Shown in pieces: positions 27,578 to 48,100 of a stretch of DNA of 64,000 nucleotides; the first letter of the stretch is position 1; every line of letters starts with the position of its first letter. The stretch spans positions 11,532,001-11,596,000 of the forward strand of contig OZ004610.1 of assembly GCA_963924565.1 (NCBI GenBank). The letters run 5' to 3'. Origin of the DNA: Ascidiella aspersa. Its lineage: Eukaryota. The notes under the pieces are model-generated. The model made no database searches and had not been told where the DNA came from. It saw only the letters and a program-made list of their open reading frames with translations. The position numbers and the translations under genes were made by a program.

Positions 27578-28778
27578 TAGTTTTACCAAATCGGTTATGT
27601 GTCGTTATTTATTTTATAGAAAAAAAAACGTCCAAAACTTTTTTGCAGGGTTTCTAATCGTAGATTTTTTACGGGCAACCTTAGCCTCGATACCTAGCGC
27701 CTACCTGCCTCCTGACATTTTTTGAAAGCAAGAAGGTTACAAATAAATAATTTTATTCTGTTATGTGCAATCAAGAAGCATAATTCCGTAATAAATATTT
27801 GACACATGTTTTTGCGTCCTAGTCAATGAGGTTGTCCCAGTAATAAGCATAACGTCTATTCAGGACTTGTATATATCGGGGCGTGCTGTAAGATTTTAAA
27901 GTACATGAACCAGTCGATACACCTATAGATAAAAATGATTGATCGTTTGCCACCCTGCGCAAACCATGCTGGCGTGCACTAGTGACGTGACTGCCGGGGC
28001 TCGGGAGTAGCTGCTTGTGGGACGTAGCAGGATGTTATTTCACAGCAGTTCCGATCGCCGTCTCTCTGCTTGGCGGACAAACAACAACGTTGAGCCCTTG
28101 GCCTAGCAAAAGCAACAAAACTATACCCGCGTCGCTTTCCATGCATCCGCCTTCACTTTTCCGAGTGCACTTGCCACTTCCCGACTAGTTTTCCGGGGAC
28201 TCACGTTCCATCATAGGATCGGTCGACACACCCCACCCCATATCTATGTGCTTCTGTGCATTTTACCCATCAAATGCTCAATCAATTGCCAATTTTTTAC
28301 GCCATGCAAAAAAAAATCAAGTGGATTTATGACCACGTTAGGTTTTGAAGGCCATGAAACCATCCCGTTAAGTTTGTCACGCAAAAAAGTAAACATGCAA
28401 TGTTTTAAAAATTGTATCACAAATCAGTATGGTTGAGGGAAAACCAAAAGGAAAATCCTGCCCTGGCTGTCTAAACTTACAAAGCAACTCGCACGTGATA
28501 GGTCCGCAACATGTGTCTCAGTTGTTTTAATTTTTAATATACTCTCTGCTCACGAAATGCAGACTCAGCAAACACAGAACAGACATATTAGCAAAGTTAT
28601 CTGTCAAACAAACAGCCCCAGCGAGTGATGTGATGGCGTCGGCGTTGTGTTCATTGCATCATACATTTTACACGCACCTGTGCTTGAGCGTTGGTGACAT
28701 CCGAGTATCTTTTGGTCAAGTGCCCTGCCGGAGGAAGCCGCAACACTTTGCACATCCTAAACTTCCTCTGTGAAGGTC

Positions 28779-28816
28779 CATAAATTGAGCGTCCTCACGC
28801 CGTTTCAAATCAGATC
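28779..28816 (+). promoter_or_regulatory. Candidate TATA-like box (CATAAAT) and initiator of the secreted-protein gene
   Basis: CATAAAT at 28779 and TCAGATC ~31 nt downstream, ~55 nt before the ATG; same arrangement in copy 2. Confidence 0.4.
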
Positions 28817-28867
28817 ATCTTGTTGTATTAATCAATAGGAAGATCAGACAACGAACGAACAAGGAAG

Positions 28868-31800
28868 ATGAAGATTCTGCTGCTCCTTCTCGCATATGTT
28901 GCGGTAAGAAATAAAATTATATTATTGCGCTTTGACGTTTTTCGCTATTGCCTGTTGAAGGTCGCCGGCTGCACGGTGGTGAGTTTACACATAAACCCTA
29001 AAATTTTGGTAACCTATACAAGAAGAGTGGCTTGAATATAAACACATGATTTGTTTGTTTTGTTTTGTTATATTGTGGGAAATATTACAAAATATGCTTT
29101 TCTCTTTTACGATTTGCAGTTTGCGGCCTTGTCGGCTTCGAAATTGTTACTGCGCATACGTTAGTTGAACTCGGGAATCGATGTCTTAAGTTTTTTTGTT
29201 TTTGCACGAGCACAAATCAGATGAGACACTACTGCAACTTTGGTTTAAAACAAAAAAAGCTGTAAATCTTTTTTTCATTTTCAGGCGACGAACGCGTTCT
29301 ATTACCGTAGTTACTACTACACGTACGGCTACCGGTACCCGACCAGAAGCTACTACAGCTACAATATCTACTTTGTCAAATCCTGGTGCACAGTCAGCTA
29401 CTACTCGCCCATTCTCAAGCTCTACCCTGGCGACGATTGCAAAACCGAGGGTTGGGTCGGTAAGTAATTGTCACAAACAAAATATCCAAGTGTTGCAAAA
29501 AATATAGCGTATCGGACACTCCCAGACTTGCAGTCGTATTGTTTTTAATTTAATTCAGTAATTTTGATCCCTGGGCATTTATATCACTCAAGGCCAACAG
29601 CTGCAGGTCGAGTGAGGTTATTGTCCCATCATATGTTAAATCTTCCTATTTTTCTAAGCGACCAAAAACGATCATTTCTTAATCATTAGGAATAGAAAAA
29701 TGTAGAATATTCTAAAACGTCCTTCGCTTTAACCTTGCAAAGCCTAAAGATAAATGTATCGCGCTTACCAAGCGGTGATTCCATCAATTGCATCTATTTT
29801 TTAAGCTAAAATAGGCTATTTTTTCACAAATGGGAGAATTTCGCACTTTAAACTTACTTTTCAGAAAAAGATGTCCCGGACGTTAAACTGGAAATGGAAA
29901 ATCTGCTCAAAGAAAAACTTCTCGAAATCACCACCCAGATGACAAATAGGCGGGATACCGCTGTCGGTTATGTCGAATCGATCCACACGCAGTACAAGGC
30001 CTTGTATAAGAGCCGCATGACCACGTACTACCAGTATCTTATCGAGTGAGTGGCAAAAAAACTTTGTATCCTTGCAGGCAGTGTATATTAATGAATTTCT
30101 ATTCACTTTTTATGCCAACTCAGCCCATAACTTAGTGCAGCCCAGCCCAGTCCTGCTATATGACGCCTGGCTTGTTTATGTTTGCTTCGAGAAATTACTT
30201 AGGGTCGACATGTTAATGTGAGGTAAAATTTGTCACATTCAGGCTGCAACACTTATTGATCTCTCCAAAACATATATTGTAACAGTTACCAATCTCTTAA
30301 AATTACGGAAAGCTGTTTAGTTAAAAAACTTCTTACTGTATTATATTTAAAATAAAAAACAAAATCGTTAGTTGCATGTTCGCTTGTTTGTTATGACTTT
30401 CAGCTGCAATGTTAAGCTCGCCCAACCTACAGAACACAAACGTATTTATGGTCTTCCTTTATTTTACGAAGCCGCGCTACAACGGAAACGGAAAAGACAG
30501 AAATTGCGGCAAAGAGGGACCTAGAAATTAAACAATACGACGATAAACTGGATGCCACCAAAACCCGATTTGAGGCCAACTACAATTTAAGAATTGAGTC
30601 GAAGCTCAACTTAGTCAAGGCTTTCCACGCCCAACTCTTGGGAAAGTAAGTAAAATCAAAAAGAGTGGTGCCCATCAAACGTTGTTTATCGCCTTCTGAA
30701 AAGCACCATAGGTTGTGAGCAGTGGTGGGATTCAGCCGGTTCACATCGGTTCTATAGGACCGCCTCGCGAAATTTTATGAGATCAGCAAACCGGTTAGTT
30801 AGCATGACTGGTTACTGTCAATAGAATTTTGCATCTTATCTGATACACCGATTTTTTATATCCAAATAGCTCATGTGTTCTTTTTTCTTAAAATGTGCAA
30901 TGGTCAAGTTTAAACGTAACAGACATCCATTGTGTTAATTTTATAATTGTAGTAATTTTACTTTTGTGATTTTTTTTATCTGAAAATTAAACTGTTGCGT
31001 CTTAAGTACAAATAGTCATGGGAAGAACGATGGAACATGGAGTAACATTCTGTTCGTGCATCTACTTTTATTATTTGCGCGTTTTAACGTAACCACGATT
31101 TGCTCGTGTAACAGGGCCGAGCAATGTCTCATTTCGAGGAAGGCCAACATCGAAAAGTTTAAGCTGCAGCTGGACGCCTCGCTCAAGGCGTACGTCGACA
31201 GATACACCGCTCTCCACGCCGCTCGCGTTGCCAAGAAGGTGGCCTACTACAAGGCACTTCTTATCCGTGTCCACGGTAAGTACGGTCCTCTTTGCTGGGA
31301 AGGTAAATCGTTTCCGACCAGTCCTAACACTAAATTGTCTCAGGTGAATTAAAACCGTTCAATGTTATTTAAATAGTGGTTAATTTAACTTAACAATCGG
31401 TAACTAATATTTTGAATAATAATTTATTCTAATATTAATTTTACTAATTATATGCCTTATTTTTTTACAAGAATTTAGGATTTCTGTTTACGTTCTTCAT
31501 ATAGATGTTGAAAATGAATAGAGATATTTGAAAACTTTAAAAATGATACCTACTTCCGTATGGGCTTTGATATTCTTATTACGTCCTTGATATTGTTTTG
31601 TTGTTGATATATCTATATATATCCGTAAAAAACATTTAATCCGGAAACAGTGGCAAAAAGCCTTAACCCGGTTTATAAACTGTTAAGTTAACACTTTTGC
31701 ATTGGTCATTGAATTGCAACTATTTCAAATCAATAGGTGACGAAGAATGGAAGAAAACAGAAACCCAGGCACTTGTGGACGCCTACAGCACTGCCGAGCT

Positions 31801-34101
31801 TGCAAAAAGCGAGGGCACCGACGGTTACCTGAAGAAAATAGAAGAGTACAAAGAAAAGCTGATCCAACGCTACTGCTGCGCTAGCCGCTGTGGTCTTTGC
31901 AACGGGTGCTACTACTACTACAAGAAGTATTATACCAGCTACAGGTAATTGGAAAACGACCTCTTTATTTGGAAAACCATCTGGTAATTTGGAAAACTAA
32001 CTCTCTTGTTTGACAAGAATTGGTAATTGCCCTAACCTGACACAAAACGACGAAATTACTGAAGTTGCATTAATCCTCAACGTTTTAATGCTATGCTTTT
32101 CTTTTTAGTTACAGTCTCGGGAGTTGGTGGATATACAGACCGGTCACCAGTTACAGTACCTCCTGCTATTATAACTTCAAAGAAACTGCCCTTCCCCAAT
32201 GGCGCACAGTCAAATACTCGGATTTGGTTACCTGTGATGTCGGTAAGGGTCTAACAAAACGTCATAATCTTATAGTTATTTTTTAGATGTGATTTTTAAA
32301 TCGGTCTCTTTTCATTCTCGTTAATGTCAAATAAACACAAAAGTGCAGTTAGAAAAAACATGCAAATAAACCGCACGTTTTTAAGTATTCGGTCGAAATT
32401 AGCCAATGCCTGCCTGAAAACAATAATAATTTGGACTTAAATTTTCGTATGGTGTCTAACTTTTCTCCTTTATTTTCAGACGCCGTCAATGTACCAGAGG
32501 CCGACGCCGGCAATGAATTCACCAAAGCTTGTGACAAGGCTGTTGAAGATACAAGGGCGAGGTTTGCCACCTGGAAGGCTAAGTGGATGGACCATTGCAG
32601 CAGAATCGAGACCTACTACAAAACCCTTGTCGACTCAAGGCTTAACTGGGTTGTCAGATACTACACGCTTGTCTTTCAGGCCAGGTATTGACACCACTTT
32701 CATAAATGCATTTATAAACCGGCCAACTCGTATTCCGGTTGGTGCAATTTAAATTTGCCAATATTTCCAATAGTAGGATTTATGAACGATAAACTACAAC
32801 CACTCCCGAGGTACCATGGCGAAACAAATGTGCCATGCAAAATGTCGGCGAATTAACTTTTAAGATCCGTATGACAAAATGTGTGACTTGGGTAGTCAAG
32901 TCAGTAGTGAAACACTGGCATAACGACTGGGTGCTTGTTTAGTTCAAAAAAATTTATACACTTATATCCAAGTTAAAGCAAAAGTTATTATCATCGCGTG
33001 AAAATTCCCTGCTTTCTCTAGGAAGTTTCGCCGAGTGGTTTCTTCTCGAATTGGAACACTCTACGCAATACTAATTAATTTTTGCAGGAACAACAGCCTA
33101 ACCCTGAGCCCAGCGCAGGAGGCCTACATCGCATCGCTCAAATTACAAAATGAAGGCAGATGCATCGCTGCTTGTTCAACGTACAAGGCCAGTCTGGAGG
33201 CATCTTTGGCAACCGCCGAAGCTACTTTTGAAACCAATATCACTGCCTACAAAGAAAAGCTTGCAACCTTCCTGGATAGCTTTGTTGCTAAGTACAAGGA
33301 GTGTTTGGATGCTCGTACTAAAAAGATCGACGCATATAAGCTTGAGCTGGAGTCCGGTCAAGCCACTTTGAAAGCGACGCTGACTGCCCAACTCGAAGCA
33401 GTAAGAATAACTTTAGCATAAATACATAAGCATATAATAAACGGCTTAATAAACAGCATAATGTATAAGCATAATCAACAGAAAAAGACTTCGTAACTGT
33501 TTTTATTACTAAATAGTCTAGGTTCACGGTTTACTGGCGTGTTTGACTATTCGGTTCAAATTCACGCCGTCCTAAAAATGTGCGAACGGTCAAAGGACAC
33601 ACAAGATTGAAAAACTTAAGTTAAGCTAACCCTGTTGTTTTGCAGTACGTCACAGACAACAAGGCCGCCTATGAGAAAATGCTCAAGCACTTCCACGGCG
33701 AAGAGCTTCCCGCCGAAGCACAGACCATGCTGACTTGCTACGAGACGCTGCTGCAGGGAAAGAGCGACGAGGTTTCTACCGATTTCGACACTAACTACGC
33801 CGACATGATTCCCAAGCTCGTCATGCACATGGCTTGCACCGAAAAGTGCATTTCCCAGGCCGCCACTTCCTTCCCGGCCTACACGTTCAGCTACTATTAC
33901 TTCTGGCGTTACACCTATCCCACCTACACCAGATACACCTACTTGCTTGGCTTCTACCAGTAAGTTAAAATTTCAAATTATTTTGTATTTTGTTTTTAAT
34001 TACAAGTATAAATATTTAACTAATAATTTGTTTTCAGGCGATACCGCTACATCCGTGTCAGCTACCGATACAGCTCACGGCGATACGTTTTGCTGTACTA
34101 G
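28868..34101 (+). CDS. Secreted Tyr-rich two-repeat helical protein, copy 1, 654 aa; join(28868..28903,29285..29459,29865..30045,30472..30645,31115..31275,31737..31944,32109..32242,32480..32684,33088..33400,33646..33959,34038..34101). Possibly related to ascidian endostyle-specific Ends proteins (unverified)
   Basis: All 10 introns are GT-AG with consistent phases (1965 nt). Signal peptide MKILLLLLAYVAATNA; mature N-terminus FYYRSYYYTYGYRY...; C-terminus ...RYRYIRVSYRYSSRRYVLLY*; AATAAA at 34187. Confidence 0.88.
30720..31030. mobile_element. MITE-like remnant in intron 4 of the secreted-protein gene (longer in copy 2, ~39637..40005)
   Basis: Starts CAGTGGTGGGATTCAGCCGGTTC; copy 2 keeps a second GATTCAGCCGGTTC near 39981 that copy 1 lacks. 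Confidence 0.45.
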
Positions 34102-34186
34102 ACGTACAGCATTCGCCAAATCACCGGCCATCCAAACAAGGCACTCTCTGTTCCAATGTTTTGTAGTTTTTAGTTGTAGCGTCGCC

Positions 34187-34192
34187 AATAAA
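34187..34192 (+). terminator. Polyadenylation signal of secreted-protein copy 1
   Basis: AATAAA 86 nt after the stop; equivalent at 43159 in copy 2. Confidence 0.65.
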
Positions 34193-35841
34193 AGGCCGTG
34201 TGAAATACCAAGTTGTTATTTTTGCTTCTAAGTTTATCTGAGTATTTTAGCCAATTAAAGACCAAAAAGGTTACATGATGTAAAATGACTGATTAAGTTT
34301 CACAGAGAATAATGTAATATAGATTACCATAGATTTTTTTATGTAAAAATCAAGACTCGTTGTTATCAAAAACTATTAAACCAATTTGTTTATTGCCATA
34401 CAGACGATTATTGATTAAATTGAGAATTTAAATATATCACAGCATTTTAATAGTTTTTTTTCGTTAAATTATACAAAAAATAATCGACGTAAGTAATAAT
34501 GGTCCAACCCACTGATCTGGTCCAACCCTAGCAACTAAAAATATTCTTTGTTAAGGCTGGTTCGCACTAGATGCGTCTAGCGTTAACGTAAAACGTTTTT
34601 AAAAAAGCTTTCGGTTGTGGGAAAGTTGAACTATTTCAACTTTTACACTTTCGGTTACAAGCGAGGAAATTTGCCGTTAACGCTGGCAACGCGTTATGTG
34701 TGAACTGACTCTACGTCTACGAAAACCAATCACCTGTATCTCGTCGTTACTCATTGAAGTAATGATGCATAAATAATAATACTTGGATTTGATATGCCAA
34801 ATGAAAAATGATAACTATTTGTTCATATGTACTCTAATTTTTCAAAATCTGATAACCAATCAAATTAACTTTGAAACACAGAATTCTATGAAACGCGCGA
34901 ACGTTTAAAATTGTTCATGCGAAACTGGTCACGTGGTTAACAGTTGCAAAATGTAAACAGAGTTCAGTACGGTTTCATCCGTTTACAAAGTTTATACCGC
35001 TTTTAGCTGAAAGGGTTGCGCAAATATTCATTTAATTAAAGTGATATTATGTGAACTTTTTTAAGCGCTTATAAACTAAACACTTGGTTACAACCTTGTC
35101 ATCGAAATATAATATCTAAACTGGGTTTCAATCCTTGTAAGTGTAGCTTAAGGCTCGACAAACATTTAATGTAATATAAAGGTCATACTAAACTTGAATT
35201 TTCAGTTTCTATTCTTTTCATTGAATAGCCTCCTGTAACGCTTGATTCTGTTAGTTAAGATGCAAGGGATATATGGTTTCCAGGTTAGAACGGCCTGCAC
35301 TAGGGGATTTGTACTCGGCCGCGGTCATAGCCGGGCATTTCATGTAAAATCAACGTATAATGCGGTCAGCCGCGAAAAATAGCTCAAACGTGCAAAACTT
35401 TTGTCACACCAACAGTTTTGAAACTGGTATTGTGTGACCCAGGTTGGAAAGTTAAGCCCACACAGTTGCACTCTTCGCCACGGTCTTAGCTGCGCATTTT
35501 GTGTAAAATTGCCGTAAAATGCCATCTGCAAAGAAACATCACTCAAATGCGCAAAAATTTTGTTGCTTCTGGTTTCTCTATAGTATGTCATTTTCAGCCA
35601 TGCAAGTTTTAGAAATAATGTTATTCCAGCTACCCAAATTTAAGCAGAAATTTTATTCCAGCCAAACATATTTAATAAACGCATTGTCCGCGTAATATTT
35701 TAAGTTTCAAATCCGGAGTGTGACCTGGCATTACAAGTTCAACAAGATGTACTAATTTTTTTCTTATCTATCCTTTTTTTATGTCAATAGGAATATAAGG
35801 CAAATGTATTGTGTGGACATCTGCTAACATAGGTCCAAAAT

Positions 35842-36585
35842 ATGGAGGTTTCACCTGAGGCTCAAGGTGTTGATCTTTTGTTTAAAAAGTTAGGTAAGTG
35901 TGTACCGTACCCTGTTTGTACCACCTGAATTTATGAAACACAATTAAAACCACCAGTAACGTGGAAGCTGTACAGTGAAACTTTAGAAGTGTTTAAAAAG
36001 TAATTTAAGGTATTGATTGTGTTCTACCATAGATCAGATTTTGTTAAAATAACCTTATGCATCTTACTGATATAAAAGTAACCTGCTCATTTGGAAAGTA
36101 TGGCAGATCTCAACAAGATTGTGTGGGTGTACGGCTAAAAAAATCTTTCGACAGGGTACACCAATGGTCAAAAGTGCATCCCGCTTATGTACCTATAGTA
36201 AACCAGGGTGCATATTTTTTTATTTTTTGGGGTGCAGTTTGGGTCAGTTAAAAAACTTGTGAGTGTATTTGCCATACTTTCCACCATGGGAGAATCCTCA
36301 CATTTTAATAGTAAGTGGTAAATACTTTCTTTATACAAGGCACAGTGGATATTTAATTGTTTAATTTTTAAGTAGTATATGTACTGTATCTTTGCAGGAC
36401 ATAACATTGCTGAAATTCGAACTCGGGCATTAGAAAGCATTTGGTCCAAACTGGAACATGGCTTGATTCATGATGCTGACTTAGTTCAAGAAAAACAGCT
36501 TATGATTCGGCTTCTGGAGTGGTTTAACTTCAATCCATCACCAAAGCAAGACCTGGTGTTACAACTTCTTGCTAGGCTGGTTAAA
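35842..36585 (+). pseudogene. RTTN: Truncated duplicate of rotatin coding exons 1-2; join(35842..35893,36398..36585)
   Basis: Encodes [62 protein letters not shown]...LLARLVK, the same protein as at 45182..45925; the duplication junction lies ~45 nt into intron 2. Confidence 0.85.
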
Positions 36586-37791
36586 GTAAATGATACTTCA
36601 ATAAAATAAAACTCTGCATTAGTTTTGGGAACTCTGTATTATTTTGTTTTTTATTTTAACTCTGTATTAGTTTTTTTTTATTTTGTTATGTGCAATCAAG
36701 AAGCATAATTCCGTAATAAATATTTGACACATGTTTTTGCGTCCTAGTCAATGAGGTTGTCCCAGTAATAAGCATAACGTCTATTTAGGACTTGTATATA
36801 TCGGGGCGTGCTGAAAGATTTTAAAGTACATGAACCAGTCGATACACCTATAGATAAAAATGATTGATCGTTTGCCACCCTGCGCAAACCATGCTGGCGT
36901 GCACTAGTGACGTGACTGCCGGGGCTCGGGAGTAGCTGCTTGTGGGACGTAGCAGGATGTTATTTCACAGCAGTTCCGATCGCCGTCTCTCTGCTTGGTG
37001 GACAAACAACCACGTTGAGCCCTTGGCATCGCAAAAGCAACAAAACTATACCCGCGTCGCTTTCCATGCATCCGCCTTCACTTTTCCGAGTGCACTTGCC
37101 ACTTCCCGACTAGTTTTGCGGGAACTCACGTTCCATCATAGGATCGGTCGACACACCCCACCCCATACCTATGAGCTTCTGTGCATTTTACCCATCAAAT
37201 GCTCAATGAGTTGCAAATTTTTTACGCCATGCAAAAAAAAATCAAGTGGATTTATGACCACGTTTGGTTTTGAAGGCCATGAAACCATCCCGTTAAGTTT
37301 GTCACGCAAGAAAGTAAACATGCAATGTTTTAAAAATTGTATCACAAATCAGTATGGTTGAGGGAAAACCAAAAGGAAAATCCTGCCCTGGCTGCCTAAA
37401 CTTACAAAGCAACTCGCACGTGATAGGTCCGCAACATGTATCTCAGTTGTTTTAATTTTTAATATACTCTCTGCTCACGAAATGCAGACTCAGCAAACAC
37501 AGAACAGACATATTAGAAAAGTTATCTGTCAAACAAACAGCCCCAGCGAGTGATGTGATGGCGTCGGCGTTGTGTTCATTGCATCATACATTTACACGCA
37601 CCTGTGCTTGAGCGTTGGTGACATCCGGGTATCTTTTGGTCAAGTGCCCTGCCGGAGGAAGCCGCAACACTTTGCACATCCTAAACTTCCTCTGTGAAGG
37701 TCCATAAATTGAGCGTCCTCACGCCGTTTCAAATCAGATCATCTTGTTGTATTAATCAATAGGAAGATCAGACAACGAACGAACAAGGAAG

Positions 37792-40700
37792 ATGAAGATT
37801 CTGCTGCTCCTTCTCGCATATGTTGCGGTAAGAAATAAAATTATATTATTACGCTTTGACGTTTTTCGCTATTGCCTGTTGAAGGTCGCCGGCTGCACGG
37901 TGGTGAGTTTACACATAAACCCTAAAATTTTGGTAACCTATACAAGAAGAGTGGCTTGAATAAAACACATGATTTGTTTGTTTTTGTTTTGTTATATTGT
38001 GGGAAATATTACAAAATATGCTTTTCTCTTTTACGATTTGCAGTTTGCGGCCTTGTCGGCTTCGAAATTGTTACTGCGTATGCGTTAGTTGAACTCGGGA
38101 ATCGATGTCTTAAGTTTTTTTGTTTTTGCACGAGCACAAATCAGATGAGACACTACTGCAACTTTTGCTTAAAACAAAAAAAGCTGTAAATCTTTTTTTC
38201 ATTTTCAGGCGACGAACGCGTTCTATTACCGTAGTTACTACTACACGTACGGCTACCGGTACCCGACCAGAAGCTACTACAGCTACAATATCTACTTTGT
38301 CAAATCCTGGTGCACAGTCAGCTACTACTCGCCCATTCTCAAGCTCTACCCTGGCGACGATTGCAAAACCGAGGGTTGGGTCGGTAAGTAATTGTCACAA
38401 ACAAAATATCCAAGTGTTGCAAAAAAATATAGCGTATCGGACACTCCCAGACTTGCAGTCGTATTGTTTTTCATTTAATTCAGTAATTTTGATCCCTGGG
38501 CATTTATATCACTCAAGGCCAACAGCTGCAGGTCGAGTGAGGTTATTATCCCGTCATATGTTAAATCTTCCTATTTTTCTAAGCGACCAAAAACGATCAT
38601 TTCTTAATCATTAGGAATAGAAAAATGTAGAATATTCTAAAACGCTTTAACCTTCCAAAGCCTAAAGATAAATGTATCACGTTTACCAAGCGGTGATTCC
38701 GTTAATTGCATCTATTTTTCAAGCTAAAATAGGCTATTTTCTCACAAATGGGAGAATTTCGCATTTTCAAATTACTTTTCAGAAAAAGATGTCCCAGACG
38801 TCAAACTGGAAATGGAAAATCTGCTCAAAGAAAAACTTCTCGAAATCACCACCCAGATGACAAATAGGCGGGATACCGCTGTCGGTTATGTCGAATCGAT
38901 CCACACGCAGTACAAGGCCTTGTATAAGAGCCGCATGACCACGTACTACCAGTACCTTATCGAGTGAGTGGCAAAAAAACTTTGTATCCTTGCAGGCAGT
39001 GTATATTAATGAATTTCTATTCACTTTTTATGCCAACTCAGCCCATAACTTAGTGCAGCCCAGCCCAGTCCTGCTATATGACGCCTGGCTTGTTTATGTT
39101 TGCTTCGAGAAATTACTTAGCGTCGACATGTTAATGTGAGGTAAAATTTGTCACATTCAGGCTGCAACACTTATTGATCTCTCCAAAACATAGATTGTAA
39201 CAGTTACAATCTCTTAAAATTACGGAAAGCTGTTTAGTTAAAAAACTTCTCACTGTATTATATTTAAAATAAAAAACAAAATCGTTAGTTGCATGTTCGC
39301 TTGGTTGTTATGACTTTCAGCTGCAATGTTAAGCTCGTCCAACCTACAGAACACAAACGAATTTATGGTCTGCCTTTATTTTACGAAGCCGCGCTACAAC
39401 GGAAACGGAAAAGACAGAAATTGCGGCAAAGAGGGACCTAGAAATCAAACAATACGACGATAAACTGGATGCCACCAAAACCCGATTCGAGACCAACTAC
39501 AATTTGAGAATTGAGTCGAAGCTCAACTTAGTCAAGGCTTTCCACGCCCAGCTCTTGGGAAAGTAAGTAAAATCAAAAAGAGTGGTGCCCATCAAACGTT
39601 GTTTATCGCCTTCTGAAAAGCACCATAGGTTGTGAGCAGTGGTGGGATTCAGCCGGTTCACATCGGTTCTATAGGACCGCCTCGCGAAATTTTATGAGAT
39701 CAGCAAACCGGTTAGTTAGCATGACTGGTTACTGTCAATAGAATTTTGCATCTTATCTGATACACCGATTTTTTATATCTAAATAGCTCATGTGTTCTTT
39801 TTTCTTAAAATGTACAATGGTCAAGTTTAAACGTAACAGACATCCATTGTGTTAATTTCATAATTGTAGTAATTTTTCTTTTGTGATTTTTTTTATCTGA
39901 AAATTAAACTGTTGCGTCTTAAGTACAAATAGTCATGGGAAGACGACTGCTGCTTTTAGTGTGAATGTTCGCAGTGATGTGATTCAGCCGGTTCGCACCA
40001 AACGATGGAACATGGAGTAACATTCTGTTTGTGCATCTACTTTTATTATTTGCGCGTTTTAACGTAACCACGATTTGCTCGTGTAACAGGGCCGAGCAAT
40101 GTCTCATTTCGAGGAAGGCCAACATCGAAAAGTTTAAGCTGCAGCTGGACGCCTCGCTCAAGGCGTACGTCGACAGATACACCGCTCTCCACGCCGCTCG
40201 CGTTGCCAAGAAGGTGGCCTACTACAAGGCACTTCTTATCCGTGTCCACGGTAAGTACGGTCCTCTTTGCTGGGAAGGTAAATCGTTTCCGACCAGTCCT
40301 AACACTAAATTGTCTTAGGTGAATTAAAACCGTTCAATGTTATTTAAATAGTGGTTAATTTAACTTAACAATCGGTAACTAATCTTTTAAATAATAATTG
40401 ATTCTAATATTAATTTTACTAATTATATGCCTTATTTTTTACAAGAATTTAGGATTTCTGTTTACGTTCTTCATATAGATGTTGAAAATGAATAGAGATA
40501 TTTGAAAACTTTAAAAATGATACCTACTTCCGTATGGGCTTTGATATTCTTATTACGTCCTTGATATTATTTTGTTGTTGATATATCTGTATATATCCGT
40601 AAAAAACATTTAATCCGGAAACAGTGGCAAAAAGCCTTAACCCGGTTTATAAACTGTTAAGTTAACACTTTTGCATTGGTCATTGAATTGCAGCTATTTC

Positions 40701-43073
40701 AAATCAATAGGTGACGAAGAATGGAAGAAAACAGAAACCCAGGCACTTGTGGACGCCTACAGCACTGCCGAGCTTGCAAAAAGCGAGGGCACCGACGGTT
40801 ACCTGAAGAAAATAGAAGAGTACAAAGAAAAGCTGATCCAACGCTACTGCTGCGCTAGCCGCTGTGGTCTTTGCAACGGGTGCTACTACTACTACAAGAA
40901 GTATTATACCAGCTACAGGTAATTGGAAAACGACCTCTTTATTTGGAAAACCATCTGGTAATTTGGAAAACTTACTCTCTTGTTTGACAAGAATTGGTAA
41001 TTGCCCTAACCTGACACAAATAGACGAAATTACTGAAGTTGCATTAATCCTCAACTTTTTAATGCTATGCTTTTCTTTTTAGTTACAGTCTCGGGAGTTG
41101 GTGGATATACAGACCGGTCACCAGTTACAGTACCTCCTGCTATTATAACTTCAAAGAAACTGCCCTTCCCCAATGGCGCACAGTCAAATACTCGGATTTG
41201 GTTACCTGTGATGTCGGTAAGGGTCTAACAAAACGTCATAATCTTATAGTTATTTTTTAGATGTGATTTTTAAATCGGTCTCTTTTCATTCTCGTTAATG
41301 TCAAATAAACACAAAAGTGCAGTTAGAAAAACATGCAAATAAACCGCACGTTTTTAAGTATTCGGTCGAAATTAGCCAATGCCTGCCTGAAAACAATAAT
41401 AATTTGGACTTAAATTTTCGTATGGTGTCTAACTTTTCTCCTTTATTTTCAGACGCCGTCAATGTACCAGCGGCCGACGCCGGCAATGAATTCACCAAAG
41501 CTTGTGACAAGGCTGTTGAAGATACAAGGGCGAGGTTTGCCACCTGGAAGGCTAAGTGGATGGACCATTGCAGCAGAATCGAGACCTACTACAAAACCCT
41601 TGTCGACTCAAGGCTTAACTGGGTTGTCAGATACTACACGCTTGTCTTTCAGGCCAGGTATTGACACCACTTTCATAAATGCATTTATCAACCGGCCAAC
41701 TCGTATTCCGGTTGGTGCAATTTAAATTTGCCAATATTTCCAATAGTAGGATTTATGAACGATAAATTACAACCACTCCCGAGGTACCATGGCGAAACAA
41801 ATGTGCCATGCAAAATGTCGGCGAATTAACTTTTAAGATCCGTATGACAAAACGTGTGACTTGGGTAGTCAAGTCAGTAGTGAAACACTGGCATAAAGAC
41901 TGGGTGCTTGTTTAGTTCAAAAAAATTATACACTTATATCCAAGTTAAAGCAAAAGTTATTATCATCGCGTGAAAATTCCCTGCTTTCTCTCGGAAGTTT
42001 CGCCGAGTGGTTTCTTCTCGAATTGGAACACTCTACCCAATACTAATTAATTTTTGCAGGAACAACAGCCTAACCCTGAGCCCAGCGCAGGAGGCCTACA
42101 TCGCATCGCTCAAATTACAAAATGAAGGCAGATGCATCGCTGCTTGTTCAACGTACAAGGCCAGTCTGGAGGCATCTTTGGCAACCGCCGAAGCTACTTT
42201 TGAAACCAATATCACTGCCTACAAAGAAAAGCTTGCAACCTTCCTGGATAGCTTTGTTGCTAAGTACAAGGAGTGTTTGGATGCTCGTACTAAAAAGATC
42301 GACGCATATAAGCTTGAGCTGGAGTCCGGTCAAGCCACTTTGAAAGCGACGCTGACTGCCCAACTCGAAGCAGTAAGAATAACTTTAGCATAAATACATA
42401 AGCATATAATAAACGGCTTAATAAACAGCATAATGTATAAGCATAATCAACAGAAAAAGACTTCGTAACTGTTTTTATTACTAAATAGTCTAGGTTCACG
42501 GTTTACTGGCGTGTTTGACTATTCGGTTCAAATTCACGCCGTCCTAAAAATGTGCGAACGGTCAAAGGACACACAAGATTGAAAAACTTAAGTTAAGCTA
42601 ACCATGTTGTTTTGCAGTACGTCACAGACAACAAGGCCGCCTATGAGAAAATGCTCAAGCACTTCCACGGCGAAGAGCTTCCCGCCGAAGCACAGACCAT
42701 GCTGACTTGCTACGAGACGCTGCTGCAGGGAAAGAGCGACGAGGTTTCTACCGATTTCGACACTAACTACGCCGACATGATTCCCAAGCTCGTCATGCAC
42801 ATGGCTTGCACCGAAAAGTGCATTTCCCAGGCCGCCACTTCCTTCCCGGCCTACACGTTCAGCTACTATTACTTCTGGCGTTACACCTATCCCACCTACA
42901 CCAGATACACCTACTTGCTTGGCTTCTACCAGTAAGTTAAAATTTCAAATTATTTTGTATTTTGTTTTTAATTACAAGTATTAATATTTAACTAATGATT
43001 TGTTTTCAGGCGATACCGCTACATCCGTGTCAGCTACCGATACAGCTCACGGCGATACGTTTTGCTGTACTAG
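37792..43073 (+). CDS. Secreted Tyr-rich two-repeat helical protein, copy 2, 654 aa; join(37792..37827,38209..38383,38783..38963,39389..39562,40090..40250,40711..40918,41083..41216,41453..41657,42060..42372,42618..42931,43010..43073)
   Basis: Same exon lengths and splice sites as copy 1 with an intact frame; by eye, two amino-acid differences (exon 4 A>T, exon 8 E>A). Confidence 0.88.
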
Positions 43074-44460
43074 ACGTACAGCATTCGCCAAATCACCGGC
43101 CATCCAAACAAGGCACTCTCTGTGCCAATGTTTTGTAGTTTTTAGTTGTAGCGTCGCCAATAAAAGGCTGTGTGAAATTCCAAGTTGTTATTTTTGCTTC
43201 TAAGTTTATCTGAGTATTTTAGCCAATTAAAGACCAAAAAGGTTACATGATGTAAAATGACTGATTAAGTTTCACAGAGAATAATGTAATATAGATTACC
43301 ATAGAATTTTTTATGTAAAAATCAAGACTCGTTGTTATCAAAAACTATTAAACCAATTTGTTTATTGCCATACAGACGATTATTGATTAAATTGAGAATT
43401 TAAATATATCACAGCATTTTAATAGTTTTTTTTTTCGTTAAATTATACAAAAAATAATCGACGTAAGTAATACGGTGGGTGAAACTTTATTCACGGCCTT
43501 ACCTCTTTGTGTATTACCGCGACAATACGATGAAATACGATTTGGAGAATATTGGAAACATCGTATTTGGAGAATATTTGCTATTTGCACCTGTTCTGTA
43601 TGTTACTCCAATCCAACATATCTACACACAATTATAAGTTGTGTATAATAATATAATAACTTATGGCTTTGAAGCGAAGGGGGTTCAAATATGGCGTAGA
43701 TTTTGGCAAATGATCGAAACATACATTTGATCAATCAAAATTTACGTAGATAATGCTTACGGCCATGTTATTACATTTTGGTCAGCTAGCATGTTTAAAA
43801 AGTCAATATTTTCATTCTCTCTAAATGATTTAACGTCTATGGTTTGCTATACTTTTTCCAACTTTTACTGTGTAAATTTTTACCATGCCTTGGTCTGAGC
43901 AATCACTGTTGAAACAGAGTTTAAATCTGTAGTTTTGAGCAATATGCAAACACGTTTATGTGCCTAATAAGCCACGTTTTATATTGAAAGTTTTGCCAAT
44001 TTAAATCCAATAAACGCAAGATTTATAAATAATAATACTTGAATTTGATATGCCAAATGAAAAATGATAACTATTTGTTCATATGTACTCTAATTTTTCA
44101 AAATCTGATAACCAATCAAATGAACTTTGAAACACGGAATTCTATGAAACGCGCGAACGTTTAAAATTGTTCATGCGAAACTGGTCACGTGGTTAACAGT
44201 TGCAAAATGTAAACAGAGTTCAGTACGGTTTCATCCGTTTACAAAGTTTATACCGCTTTTAGCTGAAAGGGTTGCGCAAATATTCATTTAATTAAAGTGA
44301 TATTATGTGAACTTTTTTAAGCGCTTATAAACTAAACACTTGGTTACAACCTTGTCATCGAAAAATAATATCTAAACTGGGTTTCAATCCTTGTAAGTGT
44401 AGCTTAAGGCTCGACAAACATTTAATGTAATATAAAGGTCATACTAAACTTGAATTTTCA

Positions 44461-44595
44461 GTTTCTATTCTTTTCATTGAATAGCCTCCTGTAACGCTTG
44501 ATTCTGTTTCTATTCTTTTCATTGAATAGCCTTCTGTAACGCTTGATTCTGTTTCTATTCTTTTCATTGAATAGCCTCCTGTAACGCTTGATTCT
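44461..44595. repeat. 45-bp tandem repeat x3 (single unit in duplication copy 1)
   Basis: GTTTCTATTCTTTTCATTGAATAGCC(T/C)...GTAACGCTTGATTCT three times; once near 35205. Confidence 0.9.
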
Positions 44596-45181
44596 GTTAG
44601 TTAAGATGCAAGGGATATATGGTTTCCAGGTTAGAACGGCCTGCAGTGCACTAGGGGATTTGTACTCGGCCGCGGTCATAGCCGGGCATTTCATGTAAAA
44701 TCAACGTAAAATGCGGTCAGCCGCGAAAAATAGCTCAAACGTGCAAAACTTTTGTCACACTAACAGTTTTGAAACTGGTATTGTGTGACCCAGGTTGGAA
44801 AGTTTAACCCACACAGTTGCACTCTTCGCCACGGTCTTAGCTGCGCATTTTGTGTAAAATTGCCGTAAAATGCCATCTGCAAAGAAACATCAAAATTTTG
44901 TTGCTTCTGGTTTTCTCTATAGTATGTTATTTTCAGCCATGCAAGTTTTAGAAATAACGTTATTCCAGCTACCCAAATTTAAGCAGAAATTTTATTCCAG
45001 CCAAACATATTTAATAAATGCATTGTCTGCATAATATTTTAAGTTTCAAATCCGGAGTGTGACCTGGCATTTCAACTTCAACAAGATGTACTAATTTTTT
45101 TCTTATCTATCCCTCTTTTTATGTCAATAGGAATATAAGGCAAATGTATTGTGTGGACATCTGCTAACATAGGTCCAAAAT

Positions 45182-48100
45182 ATGGAGGTTTCACCTGAGG
45201 CTCAAGGTGTTGATCTTTTGTTTAAAAAGTTAGGTAAGTGTGTACCGTACCCTGTTTGTACCACCTGAATTTATGAAACACAATTAAAACACCAGTAACG
45301 TGGAAGCTGTACAGTGAATCTTTAGAAGTGTTTAAAAAGTAATTTAAGGTATTGATCGTGTTCTACCATAGATCAGATTTTGTTAAAATAAACCTCTGCA
45401 TCTTACTGATATAAAAGTAACCTGCTCATTTGGAAAGTATGGCAGATCTCAACAAGATTGTGTGGGTGTACAGCTGAAGAAATCTGTTCGACAGGGTACA
45501 CCAATGGTCAAAAGTGTTTCCCGCTTATGTACCTATAGTAAACCAGGGTGCATATTTTTTTTATTTTTTGGGGTGAAGTTTGGGTCAGTTAAAAAACTTG
45601 TGAGTGTATTTGCCATACTTTCCACCATGGGAGAATCCTCACATTTTAATAGTAAGTGGTAAAAGCTTCCTTTATACAAGGCACAGTGATATTTAATTGT
45701 TTAATTTTTAAGTAGTATATGTACTGTATCTTCGCAGGACATAACATTGCTGAAATTCGAACTCGGGCATTAGAAAGCATTTGGTCCAAACTGGAACATG
45801 GCTTGATTCATGATGCTGACTTAGTTCAAGAAAAACAGCTTATGATTCGGCTTCTGGAGTGGTTTAACTTCAATCCATCACCAAAGCAAGACCTGGTGTT
45901 ACAACTTCTTGCTAGGCTGGTTAAAGTAAATGATACTTCAATAAAATAAAACTCCGTATTAGTTTTGGGCAAAAAAATTATCCAGAGCATAAAAAATTCA
46001 TGCCTGAAGGAAAGTATTGTCAAATATAGATAGAACTTGTAGTCTTAAATTGCCAAATTCTATTTCACTGTGATTCCTGTGTGATTTTAAAACATTGGTT
46101 ATTTGTATGTAAGTCGGTCCCGCAATTCCCGCTTCTCTGGTCTAATGTACACTTTTGATAATGTGTATAACAATTTAGATCTGTTTGCAAAAAAAGGTAT
46201 TTAAAAAAATTGCTTAAATGCTTATTAACAGGCTGAGAGAATCTTGCCAGCTTTCTGGTGACAAGCGTTTTTGGCCTACATTTTTTTTTTTAATGTTTCA
46301 ACCTTTCCATGTTTAGGCAATGAACAAGGCTATTACGAATTAAATTAGTTAAAAAAGTGTAAAATTTATTGTGGCATAAACAAATACATATAAAAGGGGC
46401 ATCCTAAAGTAGAACTTTAAAAATTAAATTTTTTTTTTCACCAATTTCTTCGGTTTTCTGGCTCATTCTTCGGCTGACATAGTCGCCAAGCCGCCAGCAT
46501 TCTGCCATACTGCTTATTAACATAAATCATGTCATTATTCTGTTCTTATATGCAGCATTCTTCAGCTTGTGATTTGCTGGTTTCTGTTGGGGCTGTCACA
46601 TTTCTGTCTCAGTTAAGAACAGATGCAGACTCGGACTTCAGACCACAAATCGATGTTATTATAGACAAGCTCCTTCACGTTACTGACCGTGACTTGCTTC
46701 AGGCTCGAACTTTGCCTCGTCGCTGTGTGTATGGAAAATCTAATTATGAAACTGGTAAATGTTTAGTTTCATCAATTAGAAAAAAAATGCTTCAACTGAA
46801 CTTGCTTTAGTTTTAATTTTATAAAGATCGTATGTGTTATTTGTTTTAAATATTTACAATAACTTTACCAACTTCAAAGGCAGAAACTATAGTTTGCTGC
46901 TAATTACCCTAAGTTGGTTTGATTAATAGCACTTCACTGAACTATTATATTGCTTTCCCGAATTATTTCTGAAAAAAATAAAATATGGCCTTATTTAACT
47001 AAATGTGCATTGATGTATACATAATTTGTTTTTTCTAGCAAATGAAAAGTCAATTAAAATTGTGGAGCAACCGACTTATGGATACTTTACATCAGCAGCA
47101 GAAAATGACATGGATGAAACAGTATGTACAAACAGTATATATAGCATTTTAAATAGTTTAAACAGCTATGTATACACTATGCACGGATCTGTAATGTAGC
47201 GTGATAATGATTTGCAAAGCCAAAAAGATCGAGTAGATTGGCAGCATCTTGATTAAGACTGTGAAGCAAACTGAAGATGATACAATTTCATATCTACTCA
47301 ACCTTTTTAGCTTTGCAATTCAATATCAAAATTAACAGCTATAAATTTGTACTATATTGTCCAGCAATTTCATTTTCAAAATTTTAAACAGGCATCAACA
47401 ATGACACCACCTTTTCCCAAAACCCCTGACACTCGCATCAATTTACCAACCACCAGCGATCCAGACTGCATGCGTTTTGCTGGCTTCCCCTGGCACTCAC
47501 TTACCGGCACAGATCGGCATGTTTTGGCTTCAACCGGTGCCTCGCTTTGTTCTCCCAGTACTCATCTCGTCAGAAATGCTTGTGCTTTTCTGCTGGATGT
47601 GATTTTTCGTGACTTCCCCCCGGAAATATTTCTACAAAGACCGAGCATTGTTCAGGTGACGTCATATATGATAAAATAAGCATATGTTATAGGTAAATTT
47701 AGTCGACGTCCTGGCATTCCAATGTCTACTTGGCCCCATCAAGCCTGTTGACTCCAGTGTTACCCTGGCAACACACATTTGCAATCATGATAAGTGTAAT
47801 TTGGTAAAAGATAAGAAACTCATATTGTTTACAATTTTATTACATTATATATACTAAAGTAACTTTTGGGTAAAATTATTTACTTACTATTAAAGAGACT
47901 GTTTATTATATTCCCACTTCTAATGTAGCATTGTCCATTTGACTGTTTTAATACAATTGTGAAGCTACATATTAATAAAATACTATATAATATCATGTCA
48001 AATACCCTATTCAGAGTATAAGTTTGTCTGTACATTTTTCCTTTGCTTGCAGACTTTACTAACTTTGATAAGTTCAAGACCTGGCGGTCAGCTCATGACT

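What the first reader, a model, noticed from the sequence alone, without database searches (positions are those of the whole stretch)
35842..43073. Duplication sets up a potential in-frame chimeric gene: rotatin N-terminus fused to the secreted protein
Seen: the orphan RTTN exons (52+188 = 240 nt, 80 codons) end at a phase-0 donor at 36585 and keep their upstream DNA. The next internal acceptor in my gene models is exon 2 of copy 2 (38209), also phase 0. That splice replaces the hydrophobic signal-peptide exon with 80 rotatin residues, giving a ~722-aa open frame. Knowledge: rotatin is a centriole/cilium protein. Inference: either a newborn cytosolic chimera under the RTTN promoter, or transcriptional interference with copy 2.
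Basis: partly seen in the sequence, partly recalled or inferred. Interest (0 to 1): 0.75.

Follow-up and report, generated by a model that had tools for sequence, protein, structure and literature searches.

The report
Rotatin stub upstream of duplicated secreted gene
A 9-kb tandem duplication in a sea-squirt genome has left the promoter and first two exons of the centriole gene rotatin just upstream of a second copy of a secreted-protein gene, so an in-frame fusion is possible on paper, but the available RNA reads do not show it.

Summary
A tandem duplication (unit A 27751-36629, unit B 36676-45969, 96-99% identical) copies a whole secreted, tyrosine-rich protein gene plus the upstream DNA and exons 1-2 of rotatin (RTTN). 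The first RTTN copy (35842-35893, 36398-36585; 240 nt, identical to the second) is a stub: RTTN exon 3 exists only after unit B. Its donor and the copy-2 exon 2 acceptor (38209) are both phase 0.

The duplication is probably real. The junction has 46 nt of its own with templated micro-repeats, and DNA read depth is about 1.6 times the single-copy expectation. Two alleles laid in tandem is not excluded.

Expression is not shown. In the one RNA run (about 6% read), RTTN exon 2 had depth about 1, the copy-2 promoter and exons 1-4 had depth 0, and no 36585>38209 joint was listed.

Other fates exist: a splice to RTTN exon 3 is also in frame, as are early termination and a silent stub.

This is a potential, not demonstrated, member of a known kind (chimeric gene from a tandem duplication). 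The scan already noted similar cases elsewhere in this genome (s1-788682, s1-802054). Interest is modest.

The parts
27751..36629 (+). Duplication unit A: secreted-gene copy 1, intergenic DNA, RTTN exons 1-2 and 44 nt of RTTN intron 2
   Evidence: blastn blocks against unit B at 97.9, 99.1, 99.2 and 96.2% identity; repeat families D1-D17
36630..36675 (+). Junction filler found in neither parental flank. It repeats the motif AACTCTGTATTA that lies just before the breakpoint.
   Evidence: Comparison. The own-genome DNA search finds 36300-37000 only as itself plus the two parental flanks.
36676..45969 (+). Duplication unit B: secreted-gene copy 2, intergenic DNA, parental RTTN exons 1-2
35842..35893 (+). 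Orphan RTTN exon 1 (ATG, 52 nt), identical to 45182-45233
36398..36585 (+). Orphan RTTN exon 2 (188 nt), identical to 45738-45925; phase-0 donor AAA|GTAAAT
   Evidence: Pfam RTTN_N 77.1 bits; RNA depth about 1 on this sequence, copy not distinguishable
36586..38208 (+). Would-be chimeric intron (1623 nt). It holds the junction, the copy-2 promoter and signal-peptide exon, and 5 AATAAA/ATTAAA hexamers.
   Evidence: RNA depth 0 from 36700 onward
37792..37827 (+). Copy-2 exon 1: MKILLLLLAYVA, the hydrophobic core of the signal peptide. The proposed splice would skip it.
38209..38383 (+). Copy-2 exon 2: phase-0 acceptor, the best acceptor-like site in 36600-38300
38783..43073 (+). Copy-2 exons 3-11, stop at 43071-43073. 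Introns 6 and 7 are confirmed by RNA joints.
   Evidence: joints 40916>41081 (23 reads) and 41215>41452 (10 reads)
28868..34101 (+). Secreted-gene copy 1, intact, with all GT..AG pairs kept
45182..45925 (+). Parental RTTN exon 1 (45182-45233) and exon 2 (45738-45925)
46556..46754 (+). RTTN exon 3: phase-0 acceptor, the rest of the RTTN_N domain, present only after unit B. The donor is inferred.
43473..44024 (+). Unit-B-only block upstream of the parental RTTN promoter: a very young dispersed repeat
   Evidence: 40 of 40 scored places at 100% identity, from 1941 first-look candidates
34499..34768 (+). Unit-A-only block holding a short dispersed repeat of about 160 nt
   Evidence: 543 first-look candidates; scored copies 88-93% identical

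Best explanation
A real and probably young tandem duplication of about 9.0-9.3 kb. Its right breakpoint lies 44 nt into RTTN intron 2. Its left breakpoint lies about 1.1 kb upstream of the secreted-protein gene.

The duplication left a promoter-bearing RTTN stub (exons 1-2, 80 codons, identical to the parent) 1.2 kb upstream of the ATG of a complete second copy of the secreted gene. A transcript from the stub has a phase-0 donor without its own partner. Copy-2 exon 1 has no acceptor. The next strong acceptor is the phase-0 acceptor of copy-2 exon 2.

The expected product is therefore a low-level in-frame RTTN(1-80)::secreted(13-end) mRNA that ends at copy 2's own 3' end. Its protein would lack a signal peptide and would carry only a partial RTTN_N domain.

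I take it to be a rare, non-functional by-product of the duplication, not an established gene.

Shown: the duplication anatomy, the exon identities, the phases and the open frame. Inferred: stub promoter activity, splice choice, and the protein's location and fate.
For: - Anatomy and identity of the units.
- RTTN identity of exon 2, and exon 3 present only after unit B.
- Phases and open frame.
- 38209 is the best acceptor-like site in 36600-38300, scoring 19.6 against 9.7 for the next two. The small matrix was trained on its twin in copy 1, so that score is inflated.
- Tandem duplications that cut through genes are a documented source of chimeric genes: 76 among 1116 duplications in D. yakuba (PMC5460883, passages).

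For a real duplication:
- The junction has 46 nt of its own with templated repeats.
- DNA run X7 lies at mean depth 10.1, against 6.27 expected for single-copy DNA.
- At 15 of 15 listed variant places in the RTTN part, the other letter was unit B's, in 95 of 185 X7 reads.
- X1 contigs stop at 36614 and start at 36684 without loose ends. That is expected at graph branch points on both sides of a junction.
Against: No RNA support. In X8, 7.79 million records were read (about 6% of the run) and 192 were laid.
- Depth is 0 over 35500-36299 and 36700-39899, so nothing lies on the acceptor exon.
- No 36585>38209 joint is listed. A joint needs 3 reads to be listed, RTTN exon 2 had only about 2-3 reads, and 36 joints were not shown.
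- Exons 1-2 are identical in the two copies, so the RTTN exon 2 reads cannot be assigned to the stub.

Other points against:
- Two AATAAA hexamers lie 15-20 nt behind the donor, though the parental intron has them too.
- X2 contigs show no junction: one runs from 36629 into 345 unlike letters, and there is no contig over 36630-37099.
- X1 and X2 carry only unit-B letters over 35750-36614. This fits collapse of the two copies by the contig builder, or absence of the duplication in those animals.
- X7 depth is uneven, 3.3-5.5 over 36500-37299, and I laid no single-copy flank as a control.
Confidence: 0.47

Rival explanations
1. The duplication is real, but the stub gives no chimera. Either its promoter is silent, or its transcripts end soon after exon 2 and are degraded. 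The stub is then an inert gene fragment, and copy 2 works from its own promoter.
For: RNA depth is 0 over 36700-39899, and no read lies on exon 1 (35700-35899). AATAAA hexamers at 36600 and 36605 follow the donor directly; if unspliced, the frame stops after 7 more codons. At the one exonic copy-1/copy-2 difference in the RNA-covered exons (41471), no C>A place is counted for X8 among about 14 reads there. Copy 2's letter therefore dominates, which does not suggest that copy 2 is shut down.
Against: The proximal 1.07 kb upstream of the ATG and all splice signals are kept at 96-99% identity. The same hexamers sit in the parental intron, which must be spliced. The RNA sample is too thin to show absence.
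Confidence: 0.25
2. There is no duplication in the animal. Two diverged alleles of one locus were laid in tandem by the assembler.
For: - Copy divergence of 1-4% with indels and different repeat insertions looks like allelic variation.
- Coding parts are spared: 0 of 240 nt differ in the RTTN exons against 31 of 1190 flanking nt (P = 0.003), and 11 of 2031 against 72 of 4766 in the secreted gene.
- 20 of the 25 shown variant letters in the copy-2 part are copy-1 letters, and they occur as different mosaics in X1, X2 and X7.
- X2 shows no junction.
Against: - The junction carries 46 nt present in neither flank. An allele mix-up does not create such sequence.
- X7 depth is about 1.6-2.0 times the single-copy expectation.
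- X1 contigs break on both sides of the junction.
- Unequal exchange between two diverged homologues would give the same 'allelic' pattern in a real duplication.
Confidence: 0.12
3. The stub serves as a second, upstream promoter and first exons for RTTN itself. Its donor splices across about 10 kb to RTTN exon 3 (46556) and gives a normal RTTN message.
For: Donor and exon 3 acceptor are both phase 0, and the walk stub e1-e2 + e3 is open. Stub exons are identical to the parental ones while flanks differ by 2.6%, as expected if they still encode RTTN.
Against: The splice would have to skip ten copy-2 exons with good sites, copy 2's 3' end and the parental exon 2. Including parental exon 2 shifts the frame and stops after 12 codons. 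No RNA evidence either way.
Confidence: 0.07

Closest known systems
[quoted passage not shown]
   Same: A tandem duplication with one breakpoint inside a gene puts the 5' end and promoter of that gene in front of another gene's exons, on the same strand and in a compatible frame.
   Different: Here only one breakpoint is intragenic. The downstream partner is a complete gene with its own promoter and first exon, so fusion depends on splicing over them. No chimeric RNA has been seen.
Fusion transcripts of adjacent genes / conjoined genes (cis-splicing between neighbours, PMC6862657, PMC2953495)
   Same: [quoted passage not shown]
   Different: The upstream unit is a truncated gene copy without its own 3' end. 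Read-through is therefore obligatory, not a termination failure. The case is not documented at the RNA level.
Rotatin (RTTN / Ana3), centriole protein
   Same: Stub exon 2 matches Pfam RTTN_N at 77 bits and is identical to the parental exon.
   Different: It has 80 residues, with 58 of 97 domain positions. The mapped human targeting and STIL-binding region is aa 1-889 of 2226 (PMC5558016). The stub is a gene fragment, not a rotatin gene.
Other tandem-duplication chimeras noted by this scan in the same genome (s1-788682 expressed chimeric lectin; s1-802054 gene behind a captured first exon)
   Same: Same genome, same route: tandem duplication joining one gene's 5' part to another gene.
   Different: Those notes are not checked by me. 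s1-788682 is reported with RNA support, which this locus lacks.

Membership tests
Chimeric gene from tandem duplication | Tandem duplication with a breakpoint inside a gene | tested here: met
   The right breakpoint is at 36629/45969, 44 nt into RTTN intron 2.
Chimeric gene from tandem duplication | The junction joins the 5' part of one gene directly to the 3' part of another (second breakpoint also intragenic) | tested here: not met
   The left breakpoint, about 27751, lies 1.1 kb upstream of the copy-1 ATG at 28868. Copy 2 keeps its promoter and exon 1.
Chimeric gene from tandem duplication | Same strand and a compatible reading frame across the join | tested here: met
   Both are phase 0; the frame is open for 722 or 744 aa.
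Chimeric gene from tandem duplication | A chimeric transcript exists | tested here: inconclusive
   No junction joint is listed and depth on the acceptor exon is 0. Only about 6% of one RNA run was read, and RTTN exon 2 had depth about 1.
Fusion transcript of adjacent genes (cis-splicing) | [quoted passage not shown] | tested here: inconclusive
   The geometry fits. The RNA join was not observed.
Rotatin (RTTN) gene | Complete RTTN_N domain followed by the long armadillo-like body | tested here: not met
   The stub covers profile positions 1-58 of 97. Exon 3 with positions 48-97 occurs only after unit B.
False duplication (alleles assembled in tandem) | Read depth of a single-copy locus | tested here: not met
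   X7 mean depth is 10.1 against 6.27 expected. No flank control was laid and depth is uneven, so this is suggestive only.
False duplication (alleles assembled in tandem) | No read or contig carries the junction | tested here: inconclusive
   X1 contigs break at 36614 and 36684, as at a branch. X2 has no contig over 36630-37099. The X7 bin depth cannot decide.

The most novel reading that the evidence does not exclude
The stub and copy 2 form a working new gene. The rotatin promoter drives a signal-peptide-less, tyrosine-rich helical rod protein with a rotatin N-terminal cap, moved from secretion to the cytoplasm of dividing or ciliated cells. Selection on this product would be why the stub's 240 coding bases are unchanged while its flanks differ by 2.6% (P = 0.003). 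It would be a caught-in-the-act case of gene birth with a change of cell compartment, possibly still polymorphic in the population.
Probability: 0.07. Interest if true: 0.55.

Novelty: new member of a known kind. Interest (0 to 1): 0.3.

Why it matters
If junction transcripts are found, this locus would be a clean and datable example of how one tandem duplication with a single intragenic breakpoint yields three things at once: a spare gene copy, a gene fragment, and a fusion that swaps a secretion signal for a cytoplasmic N-terminus. The animal lineage has high heterozygosity, so carriers and non-carriers might be compared.

As it stands, it is an ordinary structural by-product of a duplication. 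Its consequence is plausible but unproven, and this genome already holds better supported cases.

Tried and rejected
1. Reads. The single read-laying run covered 35500-41499, which lies wholly inside the duplicated DNA. It therefore has no single-copy flank for a depth control. The junction bin (depth 5.5) cannot separate 'junction present' from 'absent'. X1 and X2 are contigs that collapse the two copies into one path, so their lack of unit-A letters proves nothing.

2. RNA. Depth rises from about 5 on exon 5 to about 18 on exon 7 of the secreted gene and is 0 on exons 1-4. I read this as 3' bias, but an internal start near 40.0 kb is not excluded. Either way, the acceptor exon is uncovered and the test is uninformative.

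3. The splice-site matrix was built from only 12 sites, one of them the copy-1 twin of the 38209 acceptor. Its top score is therefore partly circular. I use only the ranking of the other sites.

4. I tried look-up of encoding contigs with the 76-aa open frame around RTTN exon 2. The aim was to fetch other assemblies of the locus and see which context they hold.

5. A junction 27-mer scanned in metagenome contigs gave 0 matches. That collection may leave out this genome's records, so the blank means nothing. I did not use the second scan.

6. The literature search 'rotatin' + 'ascidian' was useless, because word-start matching also hits 'rotating'. I make no claim that the locus is or is not in print.

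7. I rejected SL trans-splicing of the secreted gene as a source of an earlier acceptor. A TATA-like ATAAAT at about 37704 would put the start near 37735, leaving too short an outron before the AG at 37762. This is inference and recalled knowledge, not tested.

9. Supplementary files of the papers were not consulted. S6 Fig of PMC5460883, which draws the structure classes, was not seen.
Full report
WHAT IS THERE

The window is G000:C4:11532001-11596000 of a 308.6-Mb, 75-contig assembly. The window has no N.

A self-comparison shows a tandem duplication. Unit A is 27751-36629 and unit B is 36676-45969, aligned in four blocks (families D1-D17):

| Unit A | Unit B | Identity |
|---|---|---|
| 27751-31030 | 36676-39946 | 97.9% |
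| 31026-34498 | 40001-43472 | 99.1% |
| 34769-35252 | 44025-44508 | 99.2% |
| 35201-36629 | 44547-45969 | 96.2% |

Each unit holds, on the + strand, an 11-exon gene for a secreted tyrosine-rich protein, an intergenic stretch, and exons 1-2 of rotatin (RTTN). Copy 1 of the secreted gene is 28868-34101 and copy 2 is 37792-43073.

The units also differ by one non-homologous block each:
- Unit B has a 552-nt block (43473-44024). It is a dispersed repeat: all 40 scored genomic places are 100% identical, out of 1941 first-look candidates, and they often sit as same-strand pairs 2-10 kb apart.
- Unit A has a 270-nt block (34499-34768) that holds a repeat of about 160 nt with 543 candidates.

THE ROTATIN STUB

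Exon 1 (35842-35893) and exon 2 (36398-36585) have canonical splice signals. They translate open and are letter-for-letter identical to 45182-45233 and 45738-45925. Exon 2 alone scores 77.1 bits (E 1.9e-21) on Pfam RTTN_N, profile positions 1-58 of 97.

A six-frame scan of the whole assembly with that family gives three hits only: both exon 2 copies, and one exon 3 at window 46523-46672. Exon 3 starts at 46556 behind TTATATGCAG| in phase 0. So unit B's copy runs on into the RTTN gene, and unit A's copy is a two-exon stub.

The stub keeps 1.07 kb of homologous upstream DNA (34769-35841).

THE FRAME CLAIM

52+188 = 240 nt, so the stub donor is phase 0. Copy-2 exon 1 is 36 nt (MKILLLLLAYVA). Exon 2 begins at 38209 in phase 0 and reads ATNAFYY....

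I did not build or search a joined sequence. A codon walk by coordinates found no stop before 43071-43073. It gives 744 aa with 39350 and 40277, my higher-scoring choices. RNA joints confirm only introns 6 and 7, so that choice stays open.

IS THE DUPLICATION REAL?

For a real duplication:
- Between the end of unit A (...TAGTTTTGGG) and the start of unit B lie 46 nt that occur in neither parental flank. They repeat the AACTCTGTATTA motif that precedes the breakpoint. From recalled knowledge, such templated filler is typical of replication-based or end-joining rearrangements. It is not what a mix-up of alleles would create.
- The assembly holds 36300-37000 only as itself plus the two parental flanks. 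There is no separate single-copy haplotig.
- DNA run X7 (raw reads, 1935.8 million letters read) should give 6.27-fold depth on single-copy DNA of a 308.6-Mb genome. It gives a mean of 10.1 over 28 bins and 12.4 over the RTTN part.
- At 15 of 15 listed variant places in the RTTN part, the other letter was unit B's, in 95 of 185 X7 reads.
- X1 contigs end at 36614 and begin at 36684 with no loose ends, as at graph branch points on both sides of a junction.

Against, or undecided:
- I laid no single-copy flank as a control.
- X7 depth dips to 3.3-5.5 over 36500-37299. Local copy divergence explains this only in part.
- X2 shows no junction: one contig leaves at 36629 into 345 unlike letters, and nothing lies on 36630-37099.
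- X1 and X2 carry only unit-B letters over 35750-36614.
- X7 lacks unit B's letter entirely at several places (for example 0 of 12 at 37628 and 0 of 18 at 38703), so it is another animal. Copy-1 and copy-2 letters occur as different mosaics in X1, X2 and X7; 20 of the 25 shown rows are copy-1 letters.
- Coding DNA is spared: 0 of 240 nt differ in the RTTN exons against 31 of 1190 flanking nt (hypergeometric P = 0.003). In the secreted gene, 11 of 2031 exonic nt differ (7 synonymous, 4 not) against 72 of 4766 non-exonic.

That last pattern fits three readings: alleles, a duplication born by exchange between two diverged homologues, or selection on both copies. I put a real duplication at about 0.85-0.9. 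It may be polymorphic.

WHAT WOULD A STUB TRANSCRIPT DO?

Copy-2 exon 1 is a first exon without an acceptor. In 36600-38300 the best acceptor-like site by a small home-made matrix is 38209 (19.6). The next two are 37763 and 38044 (9.7 each). The matrix was trained on the twin of 38209, so only the ranking of the rest is informative.

The possible fates are:
- Splice to 38209: in frame, as described above.
- Use of 37763: stops the frame after 10 codons.
- No splicing: stops after 7 codons.
- Splice to parental exon 2: shifts the frame, with a stop after 12 codons.
- Splice to RTTN exon 3: in frame, giving normal RTTN. It would have to skip ten good exons and copy 2's 3' end.

Five AATAAA/ATTAAA hexamers lie in the would-be intron. 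Two are 15-20 nt behind the donor, and the parental intron has those two as well.

RNA EVIDENCE

Only one RNA run of the species was offered (X8, raw reads). 7.79 million records, about 6% of the run, were read and 192 were laid, mostly on a high-copy repeat at 40514-40559.

- Depth on RTTN exon 2 was 1.0 and 0.76 in its two bins, about 2-3 reads, on the strand expected for a + gene.
- Depth was 0 over 35500-36299 and over 36700-39899. That span is the junction, the copy-2 promoter and exons 1-4.
- Depth was 4-12 per bin over exons 5-8.
- The RNA joints shown were 40916>41081 (23 reads) and 41215>41452 (10 reads). No 36585>38209 joint was shown.
- A joint needs 3 reads to be listed, and 36 joints of all runs were not shown.

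So the chimera is neither seen nor excluded, and read-through into copy 2's promoter is not seen either.

At 41471, the one exonic copy difference in covered exons, no C>A place is counted for X8 among about 14 reads nearby. Copy 2's letter therefore dominates, which gives no sign that copy 2 is silenced. This holds only if that animal has the same letters.

WHAT THE PROTEIN WOULD BE

It would lose the hydrophobic MKILLLLLAYVA and so, by inference, secretion. It would gain 80 rotatin residues that hold 58 of 97 RTTN_N positions.

In human RTTN, the mapped centrosome-targeting and STIL-binding piece is aa 1-889 of 2226 (PMC5558016, passages). I therefore expect no rotatin-like activity. The likely outcome is a rare cytoplasmic, possibly unstable protein.

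COMPARISON AND VERDICT

The case works like the chimeric genes that tandem duplications create when they cut through genes. PMC5460883 reports 76 such chimeras among 1116 duplications, often with changed expression and at lower population frequency than whole-gene duplicates (passages).

It fails one strict feature of that class. Only one breakpoint is intragenic, so fusion depends on splicing over a complete promoter and first exon. It also lacks the defining RNA evidence.

The scan has already noted the same route elsewhere in this genome (s1-788682, reported as expressed; s1-802054; s1-802063; none checked by me).

Verdict:
- Observation confirmed.
- Interpretation partly supported.
- Best reading: a real, young duplication whose stub probably yields at most low-level in-frame chimeric RNA without function (0.47).
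- Rivals: silent or terminated stub (0.25), alleles in tandem (0.12), spare RTTN promoter (0.07).
- The boldest reading, a selected new cytoplasmic gene, keeps about 0.07.

Noticed in passing
window 43473-44024: A 552-nt block present only in unit B is a dispersed repeat. All 40 scored genomic places are 100% identical (1941 first-look candidates), and they often lie as same-strand pairs 2-10 kb apart. It looks like the terminal repeat of a very recently active element, here as a solo copy upstream of the RTTN promoter.
   Followed up: partly
window 34499-34768: A block present only in unit A holds a repeat of about 160 nt with 543 first-look candidates at 88-93% identity (SINE- or MITE-like). 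The two units thus carry different repeats at the same spot.
   Followed up: partly
window 40514-40559 (intron 5 of copy 2): An extremely high-copy short repeat. X1 word depth is about 171,000 and X7 depth about 650, with many opposite-strand joints and loose ends. It is also present in RNA reads.
   Followed up: no
window 39900-41499: RNA cover of the secreted gene starts only near 40.0 kb (one read already at 40030, upstream of my exon 5 acceptor at 40090). It rises toward the 3' end, while exons 1-4 have none. This may be 3' bias or an internal start.
   Followed up: no
window 40147: All 7 RNA reads carry A where both assembled copies and 13 of 13 X7 DNA reads carry G. The X2 contig also has A, so this is a population variant rather than editing.
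   Followed up: partly
window 35755-35791 and its twin near 45095-45131: A long pyrimidine run ending in CAATAG| lies 51 nt upstream of the RTTN ATG. It looks like a 3' splice site, for a 5'-UTR intron or for spliced-leader trans-splicing. If the stub donor used the parental twin, a stop would follow within 14 codons (read by eye).
   Followed up: no
window 44457-44546: Unit B has an extra 90-nt tandem copy in the RTTN upstream region that unit A lacks (family D17).
   Followed up: no
window 5808-6155 and 9423-9770: 348-nt inverted repeats, 96% complementary and 3.3 kb apart, with 94-nt and 180-nt tandem arrays beside and within them. This looks like a transposon with terminal inverted repeats.
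   Followed up: no
window 37828-37902: A second in-frame donor (GTG|GTGAGT at 37902) would lengthen copy-2 exon 1 from 12 to 37 codons. It scores low on the small matrix (4.5 against 9.2).
   Followed up: partly
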